Of a DNA stretch of 13,992 bases, positions 1-11,974 are shown in pieces. This stretch comes from Fonticula alba ATCC 38817 (lineage: Eukaryota; Protista; Nucleariida): NCBI GenBank assembly GCA_000388065.2, contig KB932207.1; one strand, given 5' to 3'. A program made the translations under genes and the position numbers. The first letter of the stretch is position 1. Each line of letters begins with the position of its first letter. Under the pieces are notes generated by a model that saw only the letters and a list, made by a program, of their open reading frames with translations, was not told where the DNA came from and made no database searches.

Positions 1-179
1 CCCCCCCCCTCGGCCAGGAGGGCAGCCCCCCGGGGCCGTGCGGGCTCCTGCGTGGGTCCCGGGCCACCACACGTCTCGCGAACGCGTGAGTGTGCTGGTC
101 CTTGCACGCCAGCGCAAATATGGACGCACGTGCCGGGCCTTTTTTTTTTTTGCTCTGCCCGGGGGCGCCCCGAACACAC

Positions 180-220
180 ATGAGGATCTAGGCGACCGTG
201 GTTGTGGGGGACGTCGGCTC
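180..220 (-). CDS. Putative 41-nt exon of the large gene (G-ADVPHNHGRLDPH); the gene may continue beyond the window start
   Basis: Acceptor TACAG| at 222-221 is the first AG after CACTGAC (342-336). The phase-1 reading is His-rich like the rest of the protein. A possible donor is CAT|GTGTGT at 179. An alternative phase-0 reading is EPTSPTTTVA* (stop at 190-188). Confidence 0.45.
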
Positions 221-335
221 CTGTATGTGTGCGTAGGCACATGCATCCAAGAGCCCGCCCCGGCCGGTGCGCGGTGTATAAATTTTAAATGACAACATAT
301 GTATGTGTGTGAGTGTGTGTGATGCCACAAGCGGA

Positions 336-342
336 GTCAGTG
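336..342 (-). promoter_or_regulatory. Predicted branch point CACTGAC (A at 337) for the acceptor at 221
   Basis: It lies about 12 nt inside the upstream edge of a 126-nt AG-free zone. Confidence 0.55.
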
Positions 343-886
343 GAAATGCTCCAGGGAGGAGATGTGCAGGCAGGCGCACAAGTGCCCACACGCGTGCACA
401 CGCTCTCTGGTACCCTCCCCCCCCCCGGAATGGCGGTGCGCCTCCGGGCTCCATACACTGACGCGCACCTTCTTCCGAGTGTCCCCGCATCGCCCGTGTG
501 TGTCCTTGTGTGATGTCCGGCGCGGTGGTGGGCGGGCACGCTTGCTGCACCCCCCTCTCCGCAGGAGGAGGAGGAGCAACAGCAGTAAGGCATTGCGTGT
601 GCATACACGCACAGGAAACACACGCACAAGACTGATGAATGGCAAAATGGCGGCCTGCACAGGTGCACGGCATCAAAGGTGGGGACACAGATGGGAGCCA
701 CCCACTCATGCAGGTGCACAGTTTCATGCGCGCGCGCACATGTGTGGCAGTGGCTCCCCTTCTCGCGCGCCTCTCCCTTCTCCTCCGGCTCCCGTGCAGT
801 TCTCTCTCTCAAAAACAAAGCCGCTCCTCTTCCTCTCGCAGGAGAGAGAGAGAAGGAGGAGAGTGTTTGTCTCTTCCCGCCATTAC

Positions 887-906
887 CGCGACACGCCCAC
901 GCTTCC
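887..906 (-). CDS. Putative 20-nt micro-exon of the large gene (M-EAWACR-G)
   Basis: Acceptor TTCAG| at 908-907 is the first AG after ACCTGAC (1132-1126), across a 238-nt AG-free zone. Donor is CGC G|GTAATG (GT at 886-885). The phase 2 to phase 1 exon links both neighbours in frame. An alternative phase-0 reading GSVGVSR* cannot be excluded. Confidence 0.5.
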
Positions 907-991
907 CTGAAGGCGCATTTGCGCCCGCGGACCGCGCGCAAGGTGGATTGTCGCGACCGCCGTCCCCGCACGTACGCGCCCCGCGCGCGCG

Positions 992-998
<7 letters not shown>

Positions 999-1028
<30 letters not shown>
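999..1028. repeat. (GT)15 microsatellite
   Basis: Read directly from the sequence. Confidence 0.95.
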
Positions 1029-1029
<1 letters not shown>

Positions 1030-1125
1030 CGAGGTGCCCGTGTGTTTGTCACGTCCATGGCGATTGCGTGAGCACGGGAAAGGGCGAGCGAAAGGTGCAC
1101 CATGGTTGGTGTGTTGCCGGATGTG

Positions 1126-1132
1126 GTCAGGT
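1126..1132 (-). promoter_or_regulatory. Predicted distant branch point ACCTGAC (A at 1127) for the acceptor at 907
   Basis: It lies about 20 nt inside the upstream edge of a 238-nt AG-free zone. Confidence 0.6.
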
Positions 1133-1506
1133 TTCCGCCGAGCGGCCTCCTAGAGTGCGGGAGAGAGAAGCATCCCCCCTCCCCTTCCCCCGCGAGGCAG
1201 CCGCGCATGCGAATGTCTGGAGGTGTGGCTTCTCCTCTCTCCCTGCTGCCCTGTCGGCGCGTGATAGACCAGCCTGCGAGAGGGTGTCGCTTGGCCATGC
1301 GGCGCACCTTCTTTCTCTCTCTCACTCACACACACTCTCTCTCTCTGTCTGGGTGTGTGGCCAGAGGCATTCAGTGCACTGGGGCACACGCATGCAGAGC
1401 CAGGCTCCTGCCCCCTTTTCCCCTCGCCCTGGGGTCTGCCCCCTGGATTCCCCTCCGGGGGGGGGGGGGGGGCGCGGAGGACACGCGACTGCGCACTCGA
1501 CCTCAC

Positions 1507-1848
1507 ATGCGACGCTCATCGGGCCGCAGGGGGATGGTGTTCTCGCGCGCGCGCACGGTCTCGCTGAAGCGCAGGTCATCGTAGGAGTAGTCGTCGGGCT
1601 TCATCCAGCCACCGGAGTCGCTGCCCTGCCGGCGGTCCGCCTTGGCCCCGAACTGGCGCTCGGTGTGGGTCCACTCATCCGCCAGCCGGCGGTAGGTGTC
1701 CTCCTGCCACTCGCCGGGGGTGCTGGGAGGGTGGAGGCGGCGGTAGGGCATCTCCTCGGCCGAGGTGTCGGCACCCGAGCGGCCATGGCGCTCCGGCATG
1801 CGGAACCCCTCGCGCTGGTGGTGCTGCCGGCTGTCAAGGTGATGGTCG
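1507..1848 (-). CDS. Next exon (342 nt, phase 2 to phase 2) of the large gene: ..SSH-I-DHHLDSRQHHQREGFRMPERHGRSGADT..PLRPDERR
   Basis: Acceptor ACAG| at 1850-1849 follows an AG-free intron with CACTGAC at 2159-2153. AT+C joins in frame as Ile. Composition (His/Asp/Arg-rich) and codon bias match the main exon. It ends at CGC AT|GTGAGG (GT at 1506-1505), or alternatively at the in-frame TGA at 1505-1503. Confidence 0.8.
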
Positions 1849-1894
1849 CTGTGTCACATCCGGCAAGGGGCGATGTGGTGTTTTGTGTGTGGGC

Positions 1895-1916
1895 GTGTGT
1901 GTGTGTGTGTGTGTGT
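1895..1916. repeat. (GT)11 microsatellite
   Basis: Read directly from the sequence. Confidence 0.95.
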
Positions 1917-2152
1917 GGGCGTGTGTGGATGCGCGCGCGAGCGCGTTTCCGGGAACACACGCCCGATCGCGGAGGCAGGGGGCGCCGCGGCGCGAGCGAA
2001 GCGCAGCGGTAACAGGCGGAAGGTGAGGAGAGGTGGATCGATGGCAGGAGGACGGGGAAGAGGGGGGAGGGAGAGGGCGGAGGGGCACGAAGAGTGGGTG
2101 TCGGGTGCGTAGGCGCGCAGAAGAAGAAGAAGTAGAAGAGGCAGGGACCGCG

Positions 2153-2159
2153 GTCAGTG
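2153..2159 (-). promoter_or_regulatory. Predicted distant branch point CACTGAC (A at 2154) for the acceptor at 1849
   Basis: It lies in an intron with no AG in its sequenced part. The first AG downstream (305 nt) gives an in-frame exon. Confidence 0.65.
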
Positions 2160-2230
2160 TGTGCGCACAACGAAGGGCCATGGCGGCAGGGGGAGAAGGG
2201 CGGGCAGCGGGCGCAGAGGCGGGAGGGGGG

Positions 2231-2265
2231 NNNNNNNNNNNNNNNNNNNNNNNNNNNNNNNNNNN
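2231..2265. other. Assembly gap (35 N) inside an intron
   Basis: The N run is flanked on both sides by GCAGAGGCGGG(G)AGGG, suggesting an unresolved short tandem repeat. Confidence 0.95.
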
Positions 2266-2315
2266 GCGGGCAGAGGCGGGGAGGGAGGATCATCGATCAG
2301 CCGCCGGATCATCAC

Positions 2316-3133
2316 ATGTGGCTGGACGCCGTCGGCCGGGGCGGCGGCTGCTGCTGCTGCTGGTACTGCGGATCGCCGGTGTACTGCGCGGACAGGTCGG
2401 CCCGGCCCTGCTGGAACTCGGCCATGGAGTCGGAATCCTGGCGCGGGGACAGGCCGCTGACACTGGCCCGAAGGGCCGAGTCGGCGGAGTGCGTCAGCTT
2501 CTCGGCACGGCGGTGCGCCCGGCCGTCATACTCGGACGCCCGGGCCAGCTCGGTGGCCGTGCTGCTGTGCGGGGTCACCGTGAACCGGGCATTGCGGCTG
2601 TCCGCATGCCGGGCCACGCGGTCGCTGTCGAAGTCCCCGGCCACCGCCTTGGCGGCCTGGCGCTCGGCCGAGCTCAACGGCCGGAAGTAGTTGTTCAGCA
2701 GGTTGCGCTTTTGCCCGGTGTCGGACTGGTCGCCGGGCAGCGGCGCCGCTGCCCCATGCGGCGTGGCCAAGTTCTTGCGCGGCGACGAGGGGGACGACGA
2801 CCGGCGGCCGGCGGCGGCGGCGGTGCCGCGCCGACCCCGCGCCATCGCCCGGCCGCCCAGCGGCGCCGACCACAACTGCCCGCCGGGCGCCCGGTCGGCG
2901 AAGACCTCCGGGCCGGGGGAACTCCCGCCGGCGTTGGGGCCCACCCCGGCCGGCGGGTACAGCCGGCTCACGTCCTCCTGATTGACGACGCCATCCTTGC
3001 CGATGCTCAGGGTGCTGATGGTGTTCCAGTCCTGGGCGCTGCCAAACTCCCCGGGCGAGGAGAGCGGGCTGCCCATGAAGGAGGACGACACCCAGGGCGT
3101 GATGATTCCCTCCCCCGTATAGCGCTCACTGTA

Positions 3134-3165
<32 letters not shown>

Positions 3166-6100
3166 GGTCGCGGCGGCGGCTGCTGCTGCTCATGTCCTCG
3201 TGCTGGCCGCCGGCCATGGATGTCCGGCTGGAGGAGGGGGACGCCGCCCGGGTGGACCCGGTCGAGGAGGAGTGCAGCTCCGGCCGGCGGTAGTGCTGGT
3301 GCGTTTGGCCGCCGGCGGCCGCCGGCGAGGTGGACCGGCCGGAGGCCTGGTACCCGGGGGCCGCGGCGTCGGCCATCTCCGTCTCGTAGTGGTGGGCCGC
3401 GGAGTGGCGGTCGGTGGAGCTGGCGGCGTCCACCGCGTGGCCGGCCATGGGCCGGGCATTGGAGGCCCACGGCCAGAAGCCGGTCAGCATGCCGCCGGCC
3501 TTGCGCTGGCCCTCGGACATGAAGCGCCCCTCCTGGGCCTCGGCGCCGGTGGAGGACTTGGACCGGATGTGGTGGTCCACCGACATCGGGTGGGCGCCGA
3601 AGATGCTGGCCCCGCCGTCGGCCGCCGGGTTGGGCGGGCTGCTGCTGGCGCGGCCGGCGCCCAGGCTGAAGGCCGCGCGCTGCTGCGCGTCGGCATGGTG
3701 CGACTCCGGCCTCGGGGCCGAGGAGTAGCCGGACGACTCGCTGCGGGCCTTGCCATCATCGGCTTGGCGCTGCTGGCGGTCGGTGGCCGCCGCCGAGGAG
3801 GCGTCGTCGGCCTTCTTCCGCCCCGCCAGGGCCTCGGCGCTGGCCTTCTCCGCCTCGCGGGCCTTGCGCTCGCTCTCCAGCTTGTCGGTTTCCGCGCGGT
3901 TCTCCACCCACTCGCGGTTGATGCGCTTCGGGTCGCTGCCGGCGGTCAGGCTGCTGGCCATGTCGACCACGGCCTGGGCAATGCGCGGCAGGTGGTCCAC
4001 CGCGCGGGTGCGCTGCGCCCAAATGGGCGTGGCATTGGCCAGGTGCTCATTCGGCACGGCCTTCGGGTTGGCGGCGATGTGGTTCTGGCCGGCCTCCATC
4101 CGGCGGTTGACCTCGGCCATGCTCCAGGACCCGGTGTCGGTCGGGTCCTGGGACTGCGGCCGCACGCCGCCGTGGATCAGCTCGTCCAGCGGCCCCAGCG
4201 GCAGGCGCTTGGGCCGGGCGTACTTGGCGCACTCCGGCGAGGCGGTCCGCTTGGCGGACGTCCGGTCCATGGCGCTGAGCCCGGGCTTGCCGATGACCGC
4301 CGGGTCGATGAGCTTCTTCCGGGCGGCCAGGTCCTCGGGGTCCATGTCGCCCTCCAGGGTGTCATACCGGTTGTAATGGTGGTCCCCCTCGCGGCGCTCA
4401 TGGTGGTGGTCATGGTGGTGGTGCTGGCGCGAGAAGGCCCCGCCGGGGGGCCCCCCATCGCGGTCGGTCTTGGCCCCGTCGACCAGCTGGTGGCGGGCCT
4501 CGTCGAAGGCCTCGCGGCCGGCCTGCACCGCCTTGCCCACCACGGTGCCCATCTTGTCGGCCACCTCGCCGGCCACCTGGCCGATGTCCTTCCGGCCGGA
4601 GGACAAGTCGCGCTGGATGCTGTGCACCTCGTGCTTGAGCACGGCGCGCGCCACGTCCGCCTTGTCGGCCAGCGACTGGGCCGTGTCGGAGAGGGCCCGG
4701 CGGGCCCCGTCGGCCAGCGACTCGGCCGAGTCCTTGACCGCCTCGGCGGCCGGCCGCACCGCATTGGCCGCCTGGTGGGCGGCATCCGCCGCCGGGGTGG
4801 CCTGCCCGGTGAAGGCCTCCTTGAGGGAGGTCAGCACGCTGGCCATGACGCCGGGCTTGTCCGCGCCGTGGCTGGCCGCCGCCGTGGCGTCGCGCCCATC
4901 AGCAGCGGCATCATGGCGGTACCGGTGGTCGGCCATGCCGCGGTCGCGCCGCTGCTGGTGCAGCAGGTGCCGGTCGCCGCCGGCGGCATCCGGCGACGCG
5001 TGGAAGCCCCCATCCTCATCCATGCGGCGGTGCTCATCCAAGTACTTCCGGCGGTTGCCCTCGGTCATCTTCATCATCTGCCAGTCGTCGGCATCGCGGT
5101 CGTCATCGTGCAGCTGCCGCCGGTGGTAGTGCTGCTGCTCGTCCTCGAAGTGGCGAAAGGCCTCCCGGCGACGGTGGTGATCGAAGCCGGAGTCCCCCTC
5201 AAAGTCGCCGACCTGCTCGTCGGCGAAGCGGCGATTAGCGCCGGCCATGGGGCCGGCGCCCCGGCGAAAACCCGACTCGCCGGACAGGGACGTCGAGTAC
5301 TCGGAGTCGTGGTCGGCGTGGTGCGGCGCGAAGGAAGTCCGGCGGCCGTCCAGCTGGCTGAACCCGGCCCGCTGGTGGTGCCGGCGATCGGCGTCCATCA
5401 TCCGACGGTCATTGGTGAATTCGCTGTCGGCATCCTCGTAGGTGTAACGCGGCCCGGCCCGGCGCTGGGCCATGGCATGCTCGCGGTGGCCGCCCTCCTC
5501 CCCGCGCACCGGGTGCCGGTCGAAGTACTCCTGGGCCTCGTCGCCCATGCGCTCGGCCCAGCGCCGGGCGGCCCCGGCCGCGCGCTCCGACATCTCGGCC
5601 GCCCCGTCGACCAGGCGCTCGGCCCCGTGCTCCACGCGCTCGGCCAGACGCCGGGCCGAGGGGTACTCACTGTCGGCCAGGTCGCCCAGGTACCGCGACG
5701 CCGACCGGGCCATGCCGCGGCCCATGCGCTCGCCCTCCTCCAGGGCATGGTCCAGCTGCTGGCGCAGGCGCTGGCCATCGAAGGAGTCCAGCATGCTGCC
5801 GCCGGGGCCGGTGTCGTCCTCGTGGTGGCGGTAGTAGTGGTGGGAGGAGTGGCGGCGGCGCGAGGCCCGGCCGTCGGGGCCCTCGAAGTGGCGATCGTCC
5901 TCATGGTGCCGGGCGAAGTCCCGGTCGTCGTCATCATCATCATGCTGGCGGTGGCCGTAGTGGCTGTCGCGCTGGCGCTCGCGGCCGCCCTCCTCCTCGC
6001 GCATCATCATGCGCCGCTTGTCAGCATCATCATGCGGCATGGCCGTCGAGGACAGGGCGCTGGTCAGGCCCTCGGCCATCTGGCCGGCCGCGCGGCCGGC

Positions 6101-7453
6101 CTCATTCAAGGCCCCCGACAGGTCCCCATGGCGGATGTGGTCGAAGGCACGCGAGGCCCCGCGAGTCAGGGCGTCGCTGGCCCGGCGGGCGCCATCGGTC
6201 TGGGCCAGGCGCTCGCCGGCGTCCGCCAGCCGGTCGGCCACCTCGTCGCCGGCCTGGCGAATGGACCGGCGGCCGCGCTTCAGCGCATTGATGGCGTGCA
6301 TGGCCCCGCCGGCCAGGTCCCCGGAGGACACCGCCTCCAGGGTCTTCTGGCCCTCGCGCATGGCGCTGGTGGCATCCCGGCGCATGAGCTCCCCACGGGG
6401 GGACTTGGCCAGCTCGCCGAGGGCACGACCGCCCTCCTGCATCAGCTGGTCCACCATGCCGCCGGCGCTGGCGCTGGCCCCACCGCGGCCGGACAGCCGG
6501 GCCCCGGCACGCCACGACCGCTCGAAGTCCTCCACCTGCTGGCCGAAGCTGCGATCGCGCGGCGACGAGGCATACCCTCCCCGGGGCTCGTCGTCCTCGT
6601 AGTAGGACCCGCTGCCGGCGGCCCGGCGCCGATGGTCGGCCGACTGGCGCCAGCTGTCGCCACCATGGTGGTGGCGGCCGCCGTGGCGCATGCCACCGCC
6701 CCCGCTGCCGGCATGCTCGCCGTCATCATGGTCGAAGTGCTGGCGGCGGGAGAACCGCCCGGCCAGGCGCTCGCCGGCCCGCGGCGTCGGCGGCCCATAG
6801 TAGTGCCCATCGTGGCGCTCGGCCTCGAAGTCGGTGGGCGCGTCGTGGCGCGGGTCCTCCACCTCGATGTACTCGCCGGCGTCGCGCGGCCGGCCCCCCT
6901 CGTGGGTGCCGTAGAAGTTCCGCGGGGTCCCGTAGTCCGGGGCCCGGAAGTCCCCGGCGCCGGTGCTGCCCTTGCCGGTGTCCACCATGCGCCGGTGGCC
7001 GCCGAACATCGGGCTGCCGGAGGCCGGCGAGGCGGACGGCCGCGGGGTGGCCGGCATGCTGCTGGTCCCGCGCAGGGCCCCGCGCGCGCTCTCCGCCGCG
7101 CGCTCATTGTCCCGGCGCATCAGGTCGTAGTGGCTCCAGACCTGCTGCTCGTGCATGGTGTTGCGGCGCTGCTCCTCCTCCAGACGCCGGGTTTGGTAGA
7201 GCCGGCTCCGGTCGGTGCCGCCGGCCATGTCATCGTCGTGGCCGGTCGTCGGCCGGCTGGCCATGGTCGACAGCGGCCGGACGATGTCCACCGAGGCCGC
7301 GCCGTGGCGCATGCCGCGGCCGCTGCCGCTGCCGCCCTGGTGGTGGTGGTGGTGGTGGCTGCCGTGGTGCTGCTCGCCGTGGCTCCCGCGGTACGTCATG
7401 CCCCCGGACACAAGCGACCGGGTGGTGGAGGTGGAGTAGAAGCGCGAGCCATT
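2316..7453 (-). CDS. Main 5138-nt exon of a very large, mostly disordered His/Asp/Arg/Gly-rich hydrophilin-like protein with LEA-like amphipathic helical blocks; no family recognised
   Basis: The frame is open from acceptor CAG|AAT (AG at 7455-7454; reads NGSRFYSTSTTRSLVSGGMTYRG) to the phase-2 donor CAC AT|GTGATG (GT at 2315-2314). Codons end strongly in G/C. The first in-frame ATG is at 7399; the ORF-track 'start' at 7411 is a GTG. An in-frame TAA just upstream of the acceptor bounds the exon. Confidence 0.9.
3135..3164. repeat. (CTG)10 coding trinucleotide repeat, read as poly-Ser (AGC) in the large protein
   Basis: Read directly; the protein reads DRSSSSSSSSSRY. Confidence 0.95.
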
Positions 7454-7708
7454 CTGCCGTCCGGAGCGTTACCCCAGCCAGCAGCCGAAGTGTGGCGGTT
7501 TCGGCCCGCCCCCCCCCCCGCCACCCCGCGCACCCGGACCCCGAGAGCGTCACAGGAGGCGTTCGCCGGGGGTGGCGGCGCATGTGCGCGCGTGGCCGAT
7601 ATCCCGATCCGCCCCGAGGCGCAGCAAGCGGGGCCCGCCGCAACAGGGGCACAACACGCGATCGCGGCGCGCAAACACACACGAACACGGACAACGCACG
7701 GGGACATG

Positions 7709-7739
<31 letters not shown>

Positions 7740-7745
7740 ACACAC
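7709..7745. repeat. (CA)n microsatellite with one TA interruption
   Basis: Read directly from the sequence. Confidence 0.95.
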
Positions 7746-8063
7746 GAGCAAACGGACACACGAACCCCGTCGCAGATGGCGCAGCAGGGCAAAAGAGAAA
7801 GAAGCGCGGCGAAAGAGGAGGGCGGGCACGACGGTGTCGTGGCCGGGCGCGCAGCGCGCGTGCCGGATGGTGCGACACACGAAAACAGGCGCGCGCACGT
7901 CCGCATGGCGGGGGAGGGGGTGCGGCGTGCGCGGACATGTATGGGCGTATTCGTTTGTAGGAGAAAGCACCACACCCGATGGCGATATGGGCCGGGAGGC
8001 AAAGGGCGGTATAATGCGGCGGCGGGGGGCGTGGTTCGAGGGATGGTTTTGCAAGAGTCGCCA

Positions 8064-8070
8064 GTCAGTG
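8064..8070 (-). promoter_or_regulatory. Predicted distant branch point CACTGAC (A at 8065) for the acceptor at 7454
   Basis: It lies near the upstream edge of a 642-nt AG-free zone (8097-7456). The first AG downstream opens the large exon. Confidence 0.65.
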
Positions 8071-8741
8071 GATGGGTTTGGGGTTGGGTTTTTTTTTCTT
8101 GTCTGTCTGCTTGCTTGCGCGTGTGCTTGCTTCGCCTGGGATATGTGCGCGCGCCCGCGCGCAGGAGCCAAGAAGGAAGTACGAGAAAGAGAGGAAGGGC
8201 GCAGGGCCAAGGAATAGAAAGCAGGCAGGGCGGCCATCAAACGGCCAGGCCCCTTTCTTCCGGGGGCGAGCCGAGCACCAAGCACGCGCGCTATCCCGCA
8301 TCATGGGGACCAGGCACACATGCGCCGGGGGGACACCAGGCAGACGGTCCCCACCCGTGGAAAGCAACCCGCCCTGGCTCGCGACGGGCGCCGGCGTCGC
8401 CCGCCCCCCCGCCCCCCCGCCCCCCCTTCCCCCCGCGAACAGCGGCGCACGCCTCGCACGCGAACGTCGATCGGAGGAGGAGCCCTGTGTCGTCGAGCAG
8501 GTGCGCAGGCGGCACACGCCCGAATGTGCATGGGACGGTGCGCGACCATGCGCGGGGGGGGGGGGGGGGGGCCGGAGAAGCGTGGCAGCAACCTGTGCAT
8601 GGTGCGCGCGCATCGCAATCTGCACGGGTCGAGAGGGCGTCTGACACAGACCGGTGGCCAGTGTAAGCAAGCCTACTTGCGCGCCTGGGCAAATATCACA
8701 CACAGGTATTCACACACACACATGTTCATGGAGATGCTAAC

Positions 8742-8888
8742 TGGCTGAACTGTGCGAGCGCATTTTTCGGCGCCCCAGGAGGCAGCGCGCAGGCCGAAGG
8801 GCCTGGGCTGACATCGTCCTGCACACCGGAGGAGCGGCTGGGCCTCCGCGACTCTCTCGAGCTCGGGGTTTGGGGCAAATGCCCCTGA
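8742..8888 (-). CDS. Candidate upstream exon of the large gene (SGAFAPNPELERV..CARTVQP)
   Basis: A pyrimidine tract precedes CACAG| (AG at 8890-8889). The 147 nt are open and end at the phase-0 donor CCA|GTTAGC, matching the phase-0 acceptor at 7453. Codon bias is mixed, so it could be a UTR exon. Confidence 0.25.
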
Positions 8889-9031
8889 CTGTGTGGGGAA
8901 AAAAAACAAAGGAAGGAGCATGCATATGCACACTTCGTGCGCACCGTGGGCCTGCGCACAAACGCATGTCCCTGCGCACGCTCGCGCACGGACACATGCG
9001 CATCTTTGCCCACAATCTCATGTACACTCAC

Positions 9032-9154
9032 CCACAATCGCGCACACCGACTGGCCCCCCCCCCGAGCCTGCGCGCGGGAGGGGAGAATCTGCTGCCTGC
9101 CGCCGTACGCCGCCCAATAAGCAAGCGAATGGCCAAAAAACGGCCATACAACAT
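9032..9154 (-). CDS. Candidate first exon of the large gene (MLYGRFLAIRLLIGRRTAAGSRFSPPARRLGGGASRCARLW)
   Basis: ATG at 9154 begins 41 Arg-rich, acid-free codons ending at the canonical phase-0 donor TGG|GTGAGT (GT at 9031-9030). The start context is weak and the codons are AT-rich. Confidence 0.22.
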
Positions 9155-9252
9155 ATGCACATGGGCACGTGCCACACTGGCGGCGAGCCCTGCCGAGCGG
9201 CGAACCTTCAAGTGGAAGCCCGTGAGCAACACCTCGTCTCGCTCACACACAC

Positions 9253-9254
<2 letters not shown>

Positions 9255-9289
<35 letters not shown>

Positions 9290-9304
9290 GACGCAGACGC
9301 AGAC
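9255..9304. repeat. (AC)16 followed by (GCAGAC)3
   Basis: Read directly from the sequence. Confidence 0.9.
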
Positions 9305-9937
9305 GCACATATACACCCAGGCATGCTTCCCGCCCTCGAACTATGTGCAGGGTCCTCGCGGAACAAGTCACATGCGCACACACACCAGGGGCGCGCGAGG
9401 ACAGCACAGACACCCCCGGGGCCGCCCCTGCTCGTCTTTTCCCCTCGTGCCCCCGGCGCACACATAAGTCGCTCGGCCGGATCGCAGGAGGAGGAAGCTC
9501 ATGCCACGACCAAAGCCTCTCTCTCTCCCCCCCCCCTCCAGGGCGCGGCGGAACATCGTGCCCTGAGAAGGTGTGTCTCCCTCTCTTCCCCTCACAAAAA
9601 AGAGGGCTGCTCCTGCAGCACCTGGAAAGAAAGGGGGGCTCTAGACGTGTCTTTGGAAAACCTCGTGGCGGGAGGGCGCCCGGGAAAGCCTCCTATCCGG
9701 CATGCCCACCCCCTTCACAAGCGAAAGTGCGCCCCATCCCGTGCCAAGGCCCCTGCCCGGGTTGATGAAGTTCAAAGAGGGAGGAAGGCATGTAGAGAGA
9801 GAGAGAGAGGCAGCGGGGGGAAAGGATGGCGTGACGGAGGAACCCGCACAGAGGAAGGCGACCGACCAGGGGGGCGAGAGAGGGGGAAAACAAAAGCAGA
9901 ATGATCTTCACACACGAAGAGATGTGTTTATCGAGAT

Positions 9938-10020
9938 ACACACACACACGGACACACACACACACACACACCCACACGCATACATGTGCATAGGCGTGCG
10001 CGTGCGCGTGCGTGCACGCG
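9938..10020. repeat. Interrupted (CA)n plus (GCGCGT/GCGT)-type alternating purine-pyrimidine tract
   Basis: Read directly from the sequence. Confidence 0.8.
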
Positions 10021-11113
10021 TACTCCTGGCCAGCTCCACAAAGAAGGTGCACGAGTGTGCACCACCCATGGGGGAGCGCGGGGGGGGGGGGCGCTCGTCG
10101 CAGGGTGGGGCACACACAGAAGGCAATGGAACAACACGGCGAGGCAGTTGCGCCCGGCGCCTGCTGGACCACTTCACCTCTGGGGGGGGGGGCGTGGCGC
10201 CGGAGTGGCGCGGCGATTTGTTTCGTGTGGGGAAGAGAGGCACGGGAGGCGGGGGGGAAGAAGGGCCGCCAGATCGGACGCCTTCAGCCCCCCCCCCCTC
10301 CCCCCCCTCGTGGGCGCGCGGCCATGCACACATGCTTTCTGTGGCCGATCCTGGCCGCCGCGCCCGAAGCCGGGCGCGGCGCGCGAAGAGAGCCGGCACA
10401 CCGATGCATGCACGCACACGGCCGCGCGCCCTGACACACGAAGTCCCTGCTCGTCAGCCCTCAGCAACAAGACTGGGGATGCCGATGGGACGCCATGCCG
10501 AGGGGAGGGAGGAAGGGCGGCGAGGACGCAGCGCCGCCGCCGCCGCCGCCGCCGAAGCCGACACACCCTAGCCGCTTACTTCTGAAGCGGGATTGCCAAA
10601 GTGCCAGGCAGCGGCAGAGCGGGGAGTCGCAAGCAGTGACAGGCCAAGAGGCGCACGGGGCACACACGCGAGAGGCCGGGCGAGAGCGCAAACAACCGGG
10701 CAGGCGGCCGGGCGGGCGGGCGATCGCACACGCCACGGGTGTAGTAGAACACCGCCCAGGAAGGGTGGGGACGGAGAGGAGGGGAAGAAAGAGAGCAAGC
10801 GCGGCAGGGGGGGCCCGGATGAAAACAAAGGCGCATGAGTCCACCGTGGGAGGAGGGGCCGCGAGATTTGACGCAGACGAACGAGTGGCAGGGAGGAGGG
10901 TGGGGACATGCCGGACACGCGTGCGTGGAGGGGACACACACACACGCACGCGCGCGCGAGCGCGGAAAGGGGACAAGAAGAAAAGGGCCGGCGAAAAAAA
11001 AAAACAACAACAAGGCGACAGGAAGGGCGGGAGAAGGGGGAAGGAGCGAGGAGCGAAGAAGGCATGTGACACACATTCGTCCGAGAACGGGTTGGGCAGA
11101 GAAGAGTAAGTAA

Positions 11114-11134
11114 TTAACGGAAGATGTCCGCGTT
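11114..11134 (-). CDS. Exon 3 (terminal) of the small protein: NADIFR*
   Basis: CCCTGAC (11158-11152) is followed by a pyrimidine tract and CCAG|, then AAC GCG GAC ATC TTC CGT TAA in phase 0. A pyrimidine-rich 3' region follows. Confidence 0.7.
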   Translation of the reverse strand, partial: NADIFR

Positions 11135-11379
11135 CTGGATTGGAAAGGGTCGTCAGGGGCTTCGGTCTTTCGCTCTCAAACACAGCTTGGACATGCACAC
11201 TCGCGCGCACACAGACACAGACACAGACACAGACAAGATACCCGGGGGGCGGCGATGGCTGGCCGGGACGCGGACGGCGAGGACACGCGGGCCTGCCCGC
11301 TGGCACACCCAAACACACGGAAACTAAACACACGCCCTTGCATCGCGTGCGCGCGTGCACATACACACACACACACACA

Positions 11380-11433
11380 CATGCACATGCACATGCACAT
11401 GCACATGCACATGCACATGCACATGCACATGCA
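11380..11433. repeat. (CATGCA)9 hexamer array, which is (UGCAUG)9 on the transcript strand, preceded by (AC)n
   Basis: Nine perfect tandem copies lie inside intron 2 of the small gene. Confidence 0.95.
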
Positions 11434-11744
11434 TACACAGACACACACGCACGCGCGCATACACAGACAGAGGCCCGGGGACACGGGAAGAAGGCCGCAC
11501 ACTATGGCAGAGCAGGCGCTGGCGGGTGCCCCCCCCTGTGGCAGGGGCCCCCACCCATCGAGCTGCTCCGTTTCATGGCGGCCGCCTCACGTCCCCCTGG
11601 GTCCCGGGATCCCATGTGCGGCGCGGGTGTGGCTCTCCTCAAGCACTGACCACCAATCAAACAGGAGAGAAGGCCGAGGGGTGACACCCCGATTGCTTGG
11701 CTCAGACACGCTCGCATGCGCACAGACACATGGGGACACATGGG

Positions 11745-11786
11745 CACACACACACACACACACACAGACAGACAGACAGACAGACA
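11745..11786. repeat. (CA)11 followed by (GACA)5
   Basis: Read directly from the sequence. Confidence 0.9.
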
Positions 11787-11974
11787 GGCCCGCGCGCGCG
11801 CCCGCTCGACCTCTTGGTTCCCGGCGAGTTGCGCGAGAGAGGAAGCAGGCAAGAACGCGGCGGCAGCCATCCCCACACGGACCAAAGAGGCCGGCCGGCG
11901 GGGAGGGTATCGGGAAGGCGGAGCGTGGGGGAGGGGGACAGGAGGACACAAGCGTCGCCCTATGCTGTGCGCAC

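What the first reader, a model, noticed from the sequence alone, without database searches (positions are those of the whole stretch)
221..2321. Distant branch point plus first-AG selection repeats in consecutive introns and may be the rule in this organism
Seen: three further transcript-strand AG-free zones are 2321-1851 (471 nt including 35 N), 1146-909 (238 nt) and 348-223 (126 nt). Each contains CACTGAC or ACCTGAC, 305, 220 and 116 nt before the first AG, and those AGs yield exons that chain in frame. The small gene shows the same logic at shorter range (branch A 12222 to AG 12155; A 11153 to AG 11135). I found seven non-coding minus-strand CTGAC motifs: six precede a predicted exon and the seventh precedes an intron-like end at 10447. 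Caveat: CACTGAC also occurs twice on the plus strand (455, 11644), so the motif alone is not proof. Inference: the spliceosome here fixes on a strong branch motif and scans very far, making distant branch points routine. I do not know of this being described as the default architecture in a unicellular eukaryote.
Basis: partly seen in the sequence, partly recalled or inferred. Interest (0 to 1): 0.8.

Follow-up and report, generated by a model that had tools for sequence, protein, structure and literature searches.

The report
Long AG-free intron tails in Fonticula
In one unusual gene region of the amoeba Fonticula alba, several stretches of 116-600 bases lacking the AG splice signal follow a branch-site motif, which suggests far-away branch points there, but ordinary introns of this organism keep the branch site about 50 bases from the intron end, so this is not its general rule.

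Summary
The window is Fonticula alba; the finding covers the 3' end of annotated gene H696_04378 (1915 aa, minus strand).

**Observation.** All zone coordinates, CTGAC motifs and distances (305, 220, 116 nt) are exact.
- Zone 1 (2321-1851) is annotated intron 3. AG is excluded beyond what composition predicts (about 9 expected, 0 seen).
- The N gap lies inside this intron, so reading frame is not at stake. A related-strain contig adds 27 AG-free bases, but the gap is not bridged.
- The annotation uses the second AG (1831), not the first (1849).
- Zones 2 and 3 lie after the annotated stop (1505-1503), in sequence with no coding signal. They still look like real introns: the 9-mer AAGGTGCGC, identical to a known donor of this gene, sits 180 and 131 nt upstream of their CTGAC motifs.

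**Organism-wide claim.** It fails on 26 neighbouring control introns.
- The branch motif CTNAC sits a median 50 nt from the acceptor (1 of 24 beyond 100 nt).
- AG is depleted only downstream of that motif. Long AG-free runs upstream simply reflect pyrimidine-rich introns.

**Limits.** No RNA reads cover the locus, so no junction or branch point is proven. The scan noted the same pattern before: s1-065465 on this window, and s1-065693 and s1-066609 elsewhere in this genome.

The parts
2316..7453 (-). Giant exon 3 of H696_04378 (aa 95-1806 plus 2 nt). It ends CAC AT|GTGATG, and the in-frame TGA overlaps the donor.
   Evidence: Exact mapping of annotated protein P0001 on the window. Codon score +0.65 per codon, GC3 0.92-0.95.
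1831..2315 (-). Annotated intron 3 (485 nt including a 35-N gap at 2231-2265). Donor GTGATG lies at 2315-2310.
   Evidence: AG-free from the donor to 1851, with about 9-10 AG expected and GA 12. The X5 contig adds 27 AG-free nt into the gap; the gap is not bridged.
2153..2159 (-). CACTGAC, branch-point candidate (A at 2154). It lies 305 nt before the first AG and 161 nt after the donor.
   Evidence: The donor-to-motif distance falls within the control range of 48-183 nt.
2023..2029 (-). TCCTCAC, alternative branch-point candidate (A at 2024), 175 nt before the first AG.
   Evidence: CTCAC is the motif in about a third of the control introns. AG statistics cannot separate it from CACTGAC.
1849..1857 (-). 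GTGAC (A at 1854) followed 5 nt later by the first AG (1850-1849).
   Evidence: The layout resembles control introns P4 I7 and PolA I1, where an AG 5-8 nt after the motif is skipped. The motif departs from CTNAC at its first base.
1831..1848 (-). 18 nt (DHHLDS if coding) between the first AG and the annotated acceptor AG at 1832-1831.
   Evidence: Both acceptors keep the frame. Full-codon score is +3.8 bits: the 26th percentile of coding windows and the top 2% of open non-coding windows. GC3 is only 0.67.
1503..1830 (-). Annotated last coding exon (aa 1807-1915), with stop TGA at 1505-1503. A GTGAGG donor-like site overlaps the stop.
   Evidence: Codon score +0.61, GC3 0.93.
907..1307 (-). Probable non-coding intron A. 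Donor AAG|GTGCGC (GT at 1307), ACCTGAC at 1132-1126 (A at 1127), AG-free 1146-909, acceptor AG 908-907.
   Evidence: The 9-mer AAGGTGCGC occurs 3 times, all on the minus strand, and one copy is a known donor (0.22 expected). AG count is 15 upstream of the motif and 0 downstream, with 12.4 expected. No RNA evidence.
221..468 (-). Probable non-coding intron B. Donor AAG|GTGCGC (GT at 468), CACTGAC at 342-336 (A at 337), AG-free 348-223, acceptor AG 222-221.
   Evidence: AG count is 8 upstream and 0 downstream, with 5.6 expected. The zone length alone is within background. No RNA evidence.
7454..8097 (-). Comparator in the same gene: a 642-nt AG-free tail of annotated intron 2. CACTGAC (A at 8065) lies 611 nt before acceptor AG 7455-7454.
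   Evidence: Upstream 3898 nt: AG 145, expected 145.9. Downstream 609 nt: AG 0, GA 13, expected 18.5.

Best explanation
**What the region is.** It is the 3' part of Fonticula alba gene H696_04378.
- Zone 1 is the gene's third intron, which is atypically long (about 485 nt against a local median of 165).
- Zones 2 and 3 are the tails of two further probable introns (1307->907 and 468->221). They lie in non-coding sequence after the annotated stop. They are either 3'-UTR introns or leader introns of a gene hidden in the 3.7-kb assembly gap just beyond the window.

**How it likely works.**
- In these long introns a CTNAC/CTGAC branch site sits 130-180 nt from the donor, as in ordinary introns of this organism. 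The extra length lies downstream of it.
- The second splicing step takes the first usable AG after the branch. Every AG between branch and acceptor has therefore been purged by selection, which leaves AG-exclusion zones of 116 to about 300 nt (611 nt in intron 2).
- This is the logic of human distant-branch-point exons.

**Scope.** It is a property of this locus's long introns and not of the organism's introns in general. Those have the branch motif about 50 nt from the acceptor.

**Shown:** zones, motifs, AG-specific depletion, strand specificity, donor 9-mer, coding limits.

**Inferred:** that the motifs are the branch points used, which AG is used, and that introns A and B are spliced at all.
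For: - **Gene model.** The annotated protein maps exactly.
- **AG-free zones are outliers.** The 642-, 551- and 471-nt zones exceed the free zones of every other comparable dinucleotide outside coding sequence. All lie on the sense strand. In 46 kb of real sequence, zones over 200 nt with at least 8 AG expected occur only in this locus.
- **Calibration on 26 control introns.** Upstream of CTNAC: AG 35, GA 38, expected 35.2. Between CTNAC and the acceptor: AG 2, GA 14, expected 13.2 (Poisson p=2e-4). Both of those AGs lie within 8 nt of the motif.
- **Same signature in the finding's zones**.
- **Motif and zone are linked.** CTNAC lies within 8-29 nt of the zone start in 4 of 5 sense zones and in 0 of 8 background zones (Fisher p=0.007).
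- **Strand asymmetry.** The distance from CTRAC to the next AG differs between strands (p=0.005).
- **Candidate donors.** AAGGTGCGC occurs 3 times on the minus strand only: at the annotated donor 11977-11969 and 180 and 131 nt upstream of the two downstream motifs. The donor-to-motif range in controls is 48-183 nt.
- **Strain variant.** A variant at 1132 creates an AG 5 nt upstream of the zone-2 branch A, not downstream of it.
Against: - **No RNA evidence.** The three small RNA runs listed do not hold this stretch. The one that was laid (X1) placed only two 18-nt pieces on low-complexity sequence. The runs that do hold it are DNA.
- **Acceptor conflict.** The annotation places the intron-3 acceptor at the second AG (1831). 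That fits a non-consensus GTGAC branch site 23 nt upstream and contradicts strict first-AG choice from a distant branch.
- **Limited power in intron 3.** Statistical power comes only from the last 173 nt (7.1 AG expected). The CT-rich part is uninformative, and CTCAC (175 nt) versus CACTGAC (305 nt) cannot be resolved.
- **Inflated expectations.** CA and GC microsatellites inflate the mononucleotide expectation.
- **Zone 3.** On its own it is within background.
- **Zones 2 and 3.** They lack the pyrimidine tract seen in control introns (pyrimidine fraction 0.52-0.56 against 0.76).
- **NMD.** Introns after a stop codon would be expected to expose the mRNA to nonsense-mediated decay (general knowledge).
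- **Unknown gap.** The gap content is unknown.
Confidence: 0.5

Rival explanations
1. Conventional intron 3. The branch point is the non-consensus GTGAC (A at 1854). The first AG, 5 nt away, is too close and is skipped. The annotated AG at 1831, 23 nt away, is the acceptor. The 471-nt AG-free run is a by-product of pyrimidine-rich and microsatellite composition.
For: - The annotation uses AG 1832-1831.
- Two control introns (P4 I7, PolA I1) have exactly this layout: motif, a skipped AG at +5 to +8, and the real AG at 22 nt.
- Nine of 12 P4-ATPase introns are wholly AG-free by composition alone.
- The 18 nt between the two AGs have GC3 0.67 against 0.93 in exons.
Against: - Upstream of GTGAC, 9.0 AG are expected and none is seen (p=1e-4), whereas control upstream regions match expectation (35 versus 35.2).
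- All 24 control motifs begin with C, not G.
- The 18 nt score as coding with the full codon model (top 2% of non-coding windows).
- Whether the annotated junction rests on RNA is unknown.
Confidence: 0.2
2. One reading: distant branch points (over 100 nt) with very long scanning are the default intron architecture of Fonticula alba.
For: - The median AG-exclusion zone of 26 control introns is 115 nt, and 58% are at least 100 nt.
- Other first-stage notes report similar cases elsewhere in the genome (unchecked).
Against: - In the controls the strict CTRAC motif, usually single per intron, lies 10-127 nt from the acceptor (median 51). Sixteen of 17 lie in the 3' half (p=1e-4), and only one exceeds 100 nt.
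- AG-specific depletion is confined to the segment downstream of that motif.
- The motif does not cluster at the zone edge.
Confidence: 0.06
3. Zones 2 and 3 are not spliced at all. They would be chance AG-free patches built from CA/GC repeats and an AT-rich patch in the 3' UTR or intergenic DNA, with a chance CTGAC near the edge.
For: - There is no coding potential after 1503, and the annotation ends there.
- Zone 3's length and expectation fall within background zones.
- Pyrimidine content is poor before both AGs.
- Strains differ by indels at 800 and 140.
- Donor-like sites are common in GT-repeat DNA.
Against: - Zone 2 has 12.4 AG expected and 0 seen, directly after 15 AG in the preceding 169 nt.
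- Control UTR and intergenic DNA shows AG at about the expected level.
- The exact donor 9-mer AAGGTGCGC sits 180 and 131 nt upstream of both motifs, with 0.22 copies expected in the whole window.
Confidence: 0.25

Closest known systems
Human distant-branch-point exons defined by AG dinucleotide exclusion zones (Gooding et al. 2006, PMC1431707)
   Same: A branch-site motif lies far upstream and an extended AG-free region runs to the acceptor. The inference rests on first-AG selection after the branch. The published distances reach up to about 400 nt.
   Different: - The human cases were verified by mutagenesis and splicing assays; nothing is verified here.
- The host is a unicellular relative of fungi.
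- Several such units lie in a row in one locus, and one comparator reaches 611 nt.
- Here the AG-exclusion measure is confounded by pyrimidine-rich introns, so it needs an observed/expected correction.
Ordinary Fonticula alba GT-AG introns (26 controls from P4-ATPase H696 neighbour, DNA polymerase alpha H696_04382, MTHFD1, Rad1 and others)
   Same: The branch motif family is the same (CTGAC, CTAAC, CTCAC). The donor-to-motif distance is the same (48-183 nt). The strict absence of usable AG between motif and acceptor is the same.
   Different: - Controls are 69-251 nt long and 76% pyrimidine after the motif, with the motif 10-127 nt from the acceptor.
- The finding's introns are 248 to about 485 nt, with 116-305 nt after the motif.
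- Zones 2 and 3 are not pyrimidine-rich.
- The intron-3 donor GTGATG is the weakest of all donors scored.
Yeast introns with long branch-to-acceptor distance that need RNA secondary structure (for example COF1; PMC3239191, seen only as an abstract)
   Same: The spacing between branch point and 3' splice site is long.
   Different: Predicted structure here is weak: z = -2.07 for the intron-3 segment and -0.83 for zone 2. Structure-mediated shortening is therefore not supported.
Spliced-leader trans-splice acceptors (pyrimidine tract plus first AG) of kinetoplastids
   Same: On first reading, pyrimidine-rich AG-free tracts that end at an AG just before coding sequence look alike (my own recollection, not a test).
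   Different: The organism is Fonticula alba, with ordinary GT-AG cis-introns. The annotated protein spans the junctions. No spliced-leader evidence was seen. Rejected.

Membership tests
Distant-branch-point intron with AG exclusion zone (Gooding 2006 sense) | An AG-free region upstream of a verified 3' splice site that is much longer than usual and exceeds what base composition predicts | tested here: met
   - Zone 1: about 9-10 AG expected, 0 seen, GA 12. It ends 0 or 18 nt before the annotated acceptor.
- Zone 2: 12.4-13.8 expected, 0 seen.
- Zone 3: 5.6-5.9 expected, 0 seen (weak).
- The acceptors of zones 2 and 3 are unverified.
Distant-branch-point intron with AG exclusion zone (Gooding 2006 sense) | A branch-point consensus followed by a pyrimidine tract at the upstream end of the zone | tested here: inconclusive
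   - The motif is present in all three zones.
- A pyrimidine tract follows it in zone 1 (pyrimidine 0.81 over the next 124 nt) but not in zones 2 and 3 (0.52-0.55).
- In zone 1 the whole intron is AG-free, so the zone edge does not point to the motif.
Distant-branch-point intron with AG exclusion zone (Gooding 2006 sense) | The acceptor used is the first AG downstream of the branch point | tested here: inconclusive
   The annotation uses the second AG (1831), and the first is 18 nt upstream. Codon evidence on those 18 nt is mixed. No junction reads were available.
Distant-branch-point intron with AG exclusion zone (Gooding 2006 sense) | An experimentally mapped branch point (lariat) at the distant site | not testable with these tools
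   No RNA run listed holds the stretch. The single read-laying run gave no RNA pieces here beyond two 18-nt low-complexity matches.
Canonical Fonticula alba intron (local control set) | A CTNAC motif 10-127 nt upstream of the acceptor | tested here: not met
   The nearest CTNAC to the intron-3 acceptor is 175-193 nt away. For zones 2 and 3 the distances are 220 and 116 nt. Only a GTGAC lies at 23 nt.
Canonical Fonticula alba intron (local control set) | A donor of type GTRCGY, and a donor-to-motif distance of 48-183 nt | tested here: met
   - Introns A and B: AAG|GTGCGC, at 180 and 131 nt.
- Intron 3: donor-to-CACTGAC distance of 161 nt, but the donor GTGATG is weak (PWM score 4.2, the lowest).
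   Every 120-nt window from 1502 to 1 scores negative in each frame bar one near zero (+0.10). GC3 over 905-349 is mostly 0.48-0.76, against 0.92-0.95 in exons. The annotated protein ends at 1503. Strain indels of +2/+4 nt occur at 800.

The most novel reading that the evidence does not exclude
Fonticula alba may anchor its branch site to the donor, within about 185 nt, and leave the acceptor to first-AG search over any distance. Every intron longer than about 250 nt would then carry a distant branch point. AG-purged tails of 116-611 nt would result, longer than the roughly 400 nt reported for human exons. Several such units are strung together in this one locus, some in untranslated sequence.
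Probability: 0.25. Interest if true: 0.65.

Novelty: new member of a known kind. Interest (0 to 1): 0.4.

Why it matters
**If branch mapping confirms it.**
- This locus would show constitutive branch-to-acceptor distances of 100-600 nt in a unicellular relative of fungi.
- That would extend a phenomenon known mainly from regulated human exons.
- It would also give a natural test of how far first-AG search can reach.

**Practical lessons for annotating this genome.**
- Raw AG-free length overestimates branch distance, because the introns are pyrimidine-rich. AG observed versus expected on either side of a CTNAC motif is the informative measure.
- The H696_04378 model may be incomplete: the acceptor may be 1849 or 1831, and there may be unannotated introns after the stop.

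Tried and rejected
- **Trans-splicing reading.** On first reading I took the pyrimidine tracts and first AG for a kinetoplastid-like signal. I dropped this once the genome proved to be Fonticula alba with GT-AG introns.
- **RNA evidence.** Three small RNA runs do not hold the stretch. Runs X5, X6 and X8, which do hold it, turned out to be DNA of near-identical strains with no joints. An apparent X6 joint from 1831 to 2347 carries 15 unrelated letters between CAG-repeat matches and is spurious.
- **More loci through P4-ATPase paralogues.** The GC-rich candidates belonged to chytrids and other organisms.
- **Exon solver.** My solver, working from gene range plus product length, was right for only 2 of 4 DNA-polymerase introns when checked against the protein. 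Solver-only introns were therefore kept to a minimum. Its solutions for the 75-aa gene and for the 3' end of Rad1 were discarded.
- **RWD gene.** Its apparent 2-kb intron is an assembly gap.
- **Rfam.** No RNA family matched in the window.
- **RNA structure.** Predicted structure between motif and acceptor is weak.
- **Donor PWM scan.** It was unspecific because of GT microsatellites.
- **Literature.** The top-ranked hits for Fonticula combined with branch-point terms held no paper on Fonticula.
Full report
**Identity and gene model.**
- The window is GC-rich. Earlier notes of this scan name the genome Fonticula alba.
- A protein search with the 1699-codon minus-strand ORF returned NCBI H696_04378 of Fonticula alba (1915 aa, 100% identical).
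- Mapping that protein on the window gives four coding exons on the minus strand:
  - 12507-12406.
  - 12154-11975.
  - 7453-2316.
  - 1830-1503, with stop TGA at 1505-1503.
- The annotated acceptor is the second AG (1832-1831). The two are 18 nt apart and both are in frame.
- No exon is annotated at 907 or 221.

**The assembly gap.**
- The 35 N (2231-2265) lie inside intron 3, so reading frame is not at issue.
- Contigs of a near-identical strain in a soil metagenome (X5) stop at both edges. One reads 27 further bases into the gap, with no A at all on the transcript strand.
- The gap is not bridged, so the '471 nt' length and the AG-freeness of the missing bases remain estimates.
- The 305-nt motif-to-AG distance lies wholly downstream of the gap and is unaffected.

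**RNA evidence.**
- None was available. The three small RNA runs of the species do not hold the stretch.
- Runs X5, X6 and X8 are DNA with no joints.
- RNA run X1 gave only two 18-nt pieces on low-complexity sequence.
- Every statement about splicing below rests on the annotation or on statistics.

**Observation.**
- The zones, motifs and distances are exact.
- On the transcript strand the longest AG-free zones are 642, 551, 471 and 238 nt.
- For eleven other dinucleotides the longest free zone is at most 235 nt, apart from a 346-nt GT-free stretch inside coding sequence.
- Expected AG counts from base composition, with none observed:

| Zone | Expected AG | GA observed |
|---|---|---|
| 1 | 8.5 + 1.6 | 12 |
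| 2 | 13.8 | 7 |
| 3 | 5.9 | 2 |

- In 46 kb of real sequence around the gene, zones over 200 nt with at least 8 expected AG occur only on the sense strand of this locus.
- Eight shorter zones (127-181 nt, 5-10 expected) occur elsewhere, so zone 3 alone is unremarkable.

**Calibration on ordinary introns.**
- I fetched the surrounding 53 kb (46 kb of it real sequence) as loci L001-L004.
- I derived 26 control introns:
  - 12 from the P4-ATPase and 4 from DNA polymerase alpha, by exact mapping of their annotated proteins.
  - The rest from product-length-constrained or homology-guided parses.
- Their properties:
  - Length 69-251 nt (median 165), with donors of type GTRCGY.
  - Twenty-four carry CTNAC (CTGAC, CTAAC or CTCAC), with the nearest copy 10-127 nt from the acceptor (median 49.5).
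  - The strict CTRAC motif, usually single per intron, sits at a median of 51 nt. Sixteen of 17 lie in the 3' half of the intron (p=1e-4).
- The key result is where AG is depleted:

| Segment | AG seen | GA seen | AG expected |
|---|---|---|---|
| Upstream of motif | 35 | 38 | 35.2 |
| Motif to acceptor | 2 | 14 | 13.2 |

  - The downstream depletion has p=2e-4, and both of the two AGs lie within 8 nt of the motif.
- Downstream (3') flanks of six genes also show AG at about the expected level.
- AG-specific depletion therefore marks the branch-to-acceptor segment. The many whole-intron AG-free runs (9 of 12 P4-ATPase introns; median exclusion zone 115 nt) are only a product of pyrimidine-rich composition.
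This is absent in the controls.
- The claim that distant branch points are routine in this organism fails on this sample (1 of 24 beyond 100 nt).

**Applying the calibration to the finding.**
- Intron 2 of the same gene shows the control signature scaled up: AG 145 against 145.9 expected in the 3898 nt upstream of CACTGAC, and 0 against 18.5 in the 609 nt downstream.
- Zone 2: AG 15 (11.7 expected) in the 169 nt before ACCTGAC, and 0 (12.4 expected) after it.
- Zone 3: AG 8 (6.4 expected) before the motif, and 0 (5.6 expected) after it.
- Zone 1:
  - The whole intron is AG-free.
  - The informative part is the last 173 nt (7.1 expected, p=9e-4).
  - The CT-rich 124 nt between CACTGAC and CTCAC would be AG-free anyway (1.1 expected).
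  - A branch point of roughly 100 nt or more from the AG is therefore favoured, but 175 nt (CTCAC, A2024) and 305 nt (CACTGAC, A2154) cannot be separated.
  - A branch at GTGAC (A1854) would leave 9.0 expected AG unexplained (p=1e-4).
- Motif association:
  - Sense-strand CTRAC motifs are followed by 18-611 AG-free nt, against 9-33 nt on the other strand (p=0.005).
  - CTNAC lies 8-29 nt inside the start of 4 of 5 sense zones and 0 of 8 background zones (p=0.007).

**What zones 2 and 3 are.**
- Coding potential drops away after the stop at 1503. Apart from one window near zero (+0.10), every window in every frame down to position 1 scores negative. GC3 over 905-349 is mostly 0.48-0.76, against 0.92-0.95 in exons.
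- Strains differ by +2/+4 nt at 800.
- The 'exons that chain in frame' are therefore not coding. Long open frames are common in this GC-rich DNA.
- The zones still look like introns:
  - The 9-mer AAGGTGCGC occurs three times in the window, all on the minus strand.
  - One copy is the annotated exon-2 donor. The others lie at 1310-1302 and 471-463, which is 180 and 131 nt upstream of the two motifs.
  - Only 0.22 copies are expected, and none of 200 shuffles reached three.
  - The donor-to-motif distance in controls is 48-183 nt.
- I therefore read them as probable introns 1307->907 and 468->221 in untranslated sequence. They are either 3'-UTR introns or the leader of a gene lost in the 3.7-kb gap that begins just beyond window position 1.

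**Which AG ends intron 3?**
- The 18 nt between the two AGs have GC3 0.67 and a neutral synonymous-codon score.
- With the full codon model they score +3.8 bits. That is the top 2% of open non-coding windows and the 26th percentile of coding ones.
- A GTGAC followed by a skipped AG and a real AG at 23 nt has close precedents in two control introns. This keeps the conventional reading alive at about 20%.
- Predicted RNA structure between motif and acceptor is weak (z = -2.07 and -0.83). Structure-mediated shortening, as in yeast, is not indicated.

**Comparison and novelty.**
- The logic is that of human distant-branch-point exons defined by AG exclusion zones, with distances up to about 400 nt (PMC1431707).
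- None of the top-ranked hits of a literature search for Fonticula combined with branch-point terms concerned Fonticula.
- I rate this a new, unverified member of a known kind that is confined to one unusual locus. It comes with a testable idea: the branch site is donor-anchored, and in long introns the extra length falls into the AG-purged tail.
- The scan had flagged the same pattern before: on this window (s1-065465) and on other pieces of this genome (s1-065693, s1-066609).

Noticed in passing
window 11114-11136 (-) and 7454-11974 (-): The annotation joins exon 2 (donor at 11974) to the giant exon across 4.5 kb. It skips an acceptor at 11136-11135 that has a perfect CCCTGAC 18 nt upstream. 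That acceptor would give a 7-codon terminal exon (NADIFR*). The locus may therefore make a short isoform of about 100 aa and a 1915-aa isoform sharing one N-terminal presequence.
   Followed up: partly
window 10574-10586 (-): The 551-nt AG-free zone (11134-10584) ends in TTCAG|AA|GTAAGC, an acceptor and a good donor only 2 nt apart. This resembles a recursive splice site or a micro-exon. About 125 nt downstream lies GGCTGAC with an AG 23 nt after it, the size of an ordinary intron.
   Followed up: no
window 2310-2318 and 1501-1508 (-): Both exon ends read C-ATG-TGA, with the GT of the donor (GTGATG) or donor-like site (GTGAGG) overlapping an in-frame TGA. Failure to splice would therefore terminate the protein at once.
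   Followed up: partly
window 2208-2290 (-), flanks of the N gap: Near-identical CT-rich units (ctccc.gcctctgc.cccgc) flank the gap on both sides. A collapsed tandem repeat or a poly-C run probably caused the gap.
   Followed up: no
window 1-3000; runs X5, X6, X8, X13-X15: DNA at least 95% alike across the laid 1-3000 stretch (13 single-base differences listed, plus small indels at 140 and 800) is present in soil, sludge and compost metagenomes and in runs labelled with another organism. A variant at 1132 creates an AG just upstream of the zone-2 branch motif.
   Followed up: partly
L002 10001-16142 (+), P4-ATPase: Nine of its 12 introns (94-191 nt) contain no AG at all before the acceptor and almost no GA. 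These are extremely pyrimidine-rich introns with long poly-C runs.
   Followed up: yes
L001 about 22500-26250, L001 about 7450-8515, L004 18006-21254: Large N gaps (3.7 kb, about 1 kb and 1.6 kb) bound the window and sit inside the RWD gene model. They make apparent giant introns there and make the 3' end of the Rad1 model unreliable.
   Followed up: partly
window 8176-8181 (-): GTACTT lies 116 nt upstream of the CACTGAC of the 642-nt zone. It is a possible unannotated donor that would make that branch site donor-proximal as well.
   Followed up: no
proteins P0003-P0007: Short metagenomic proteins are 59-70% identical to one P4-ATPase exon of Fonticula. They are possibly uncultured relatives that could serve for comparative intron analysis.
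   Followed up: no
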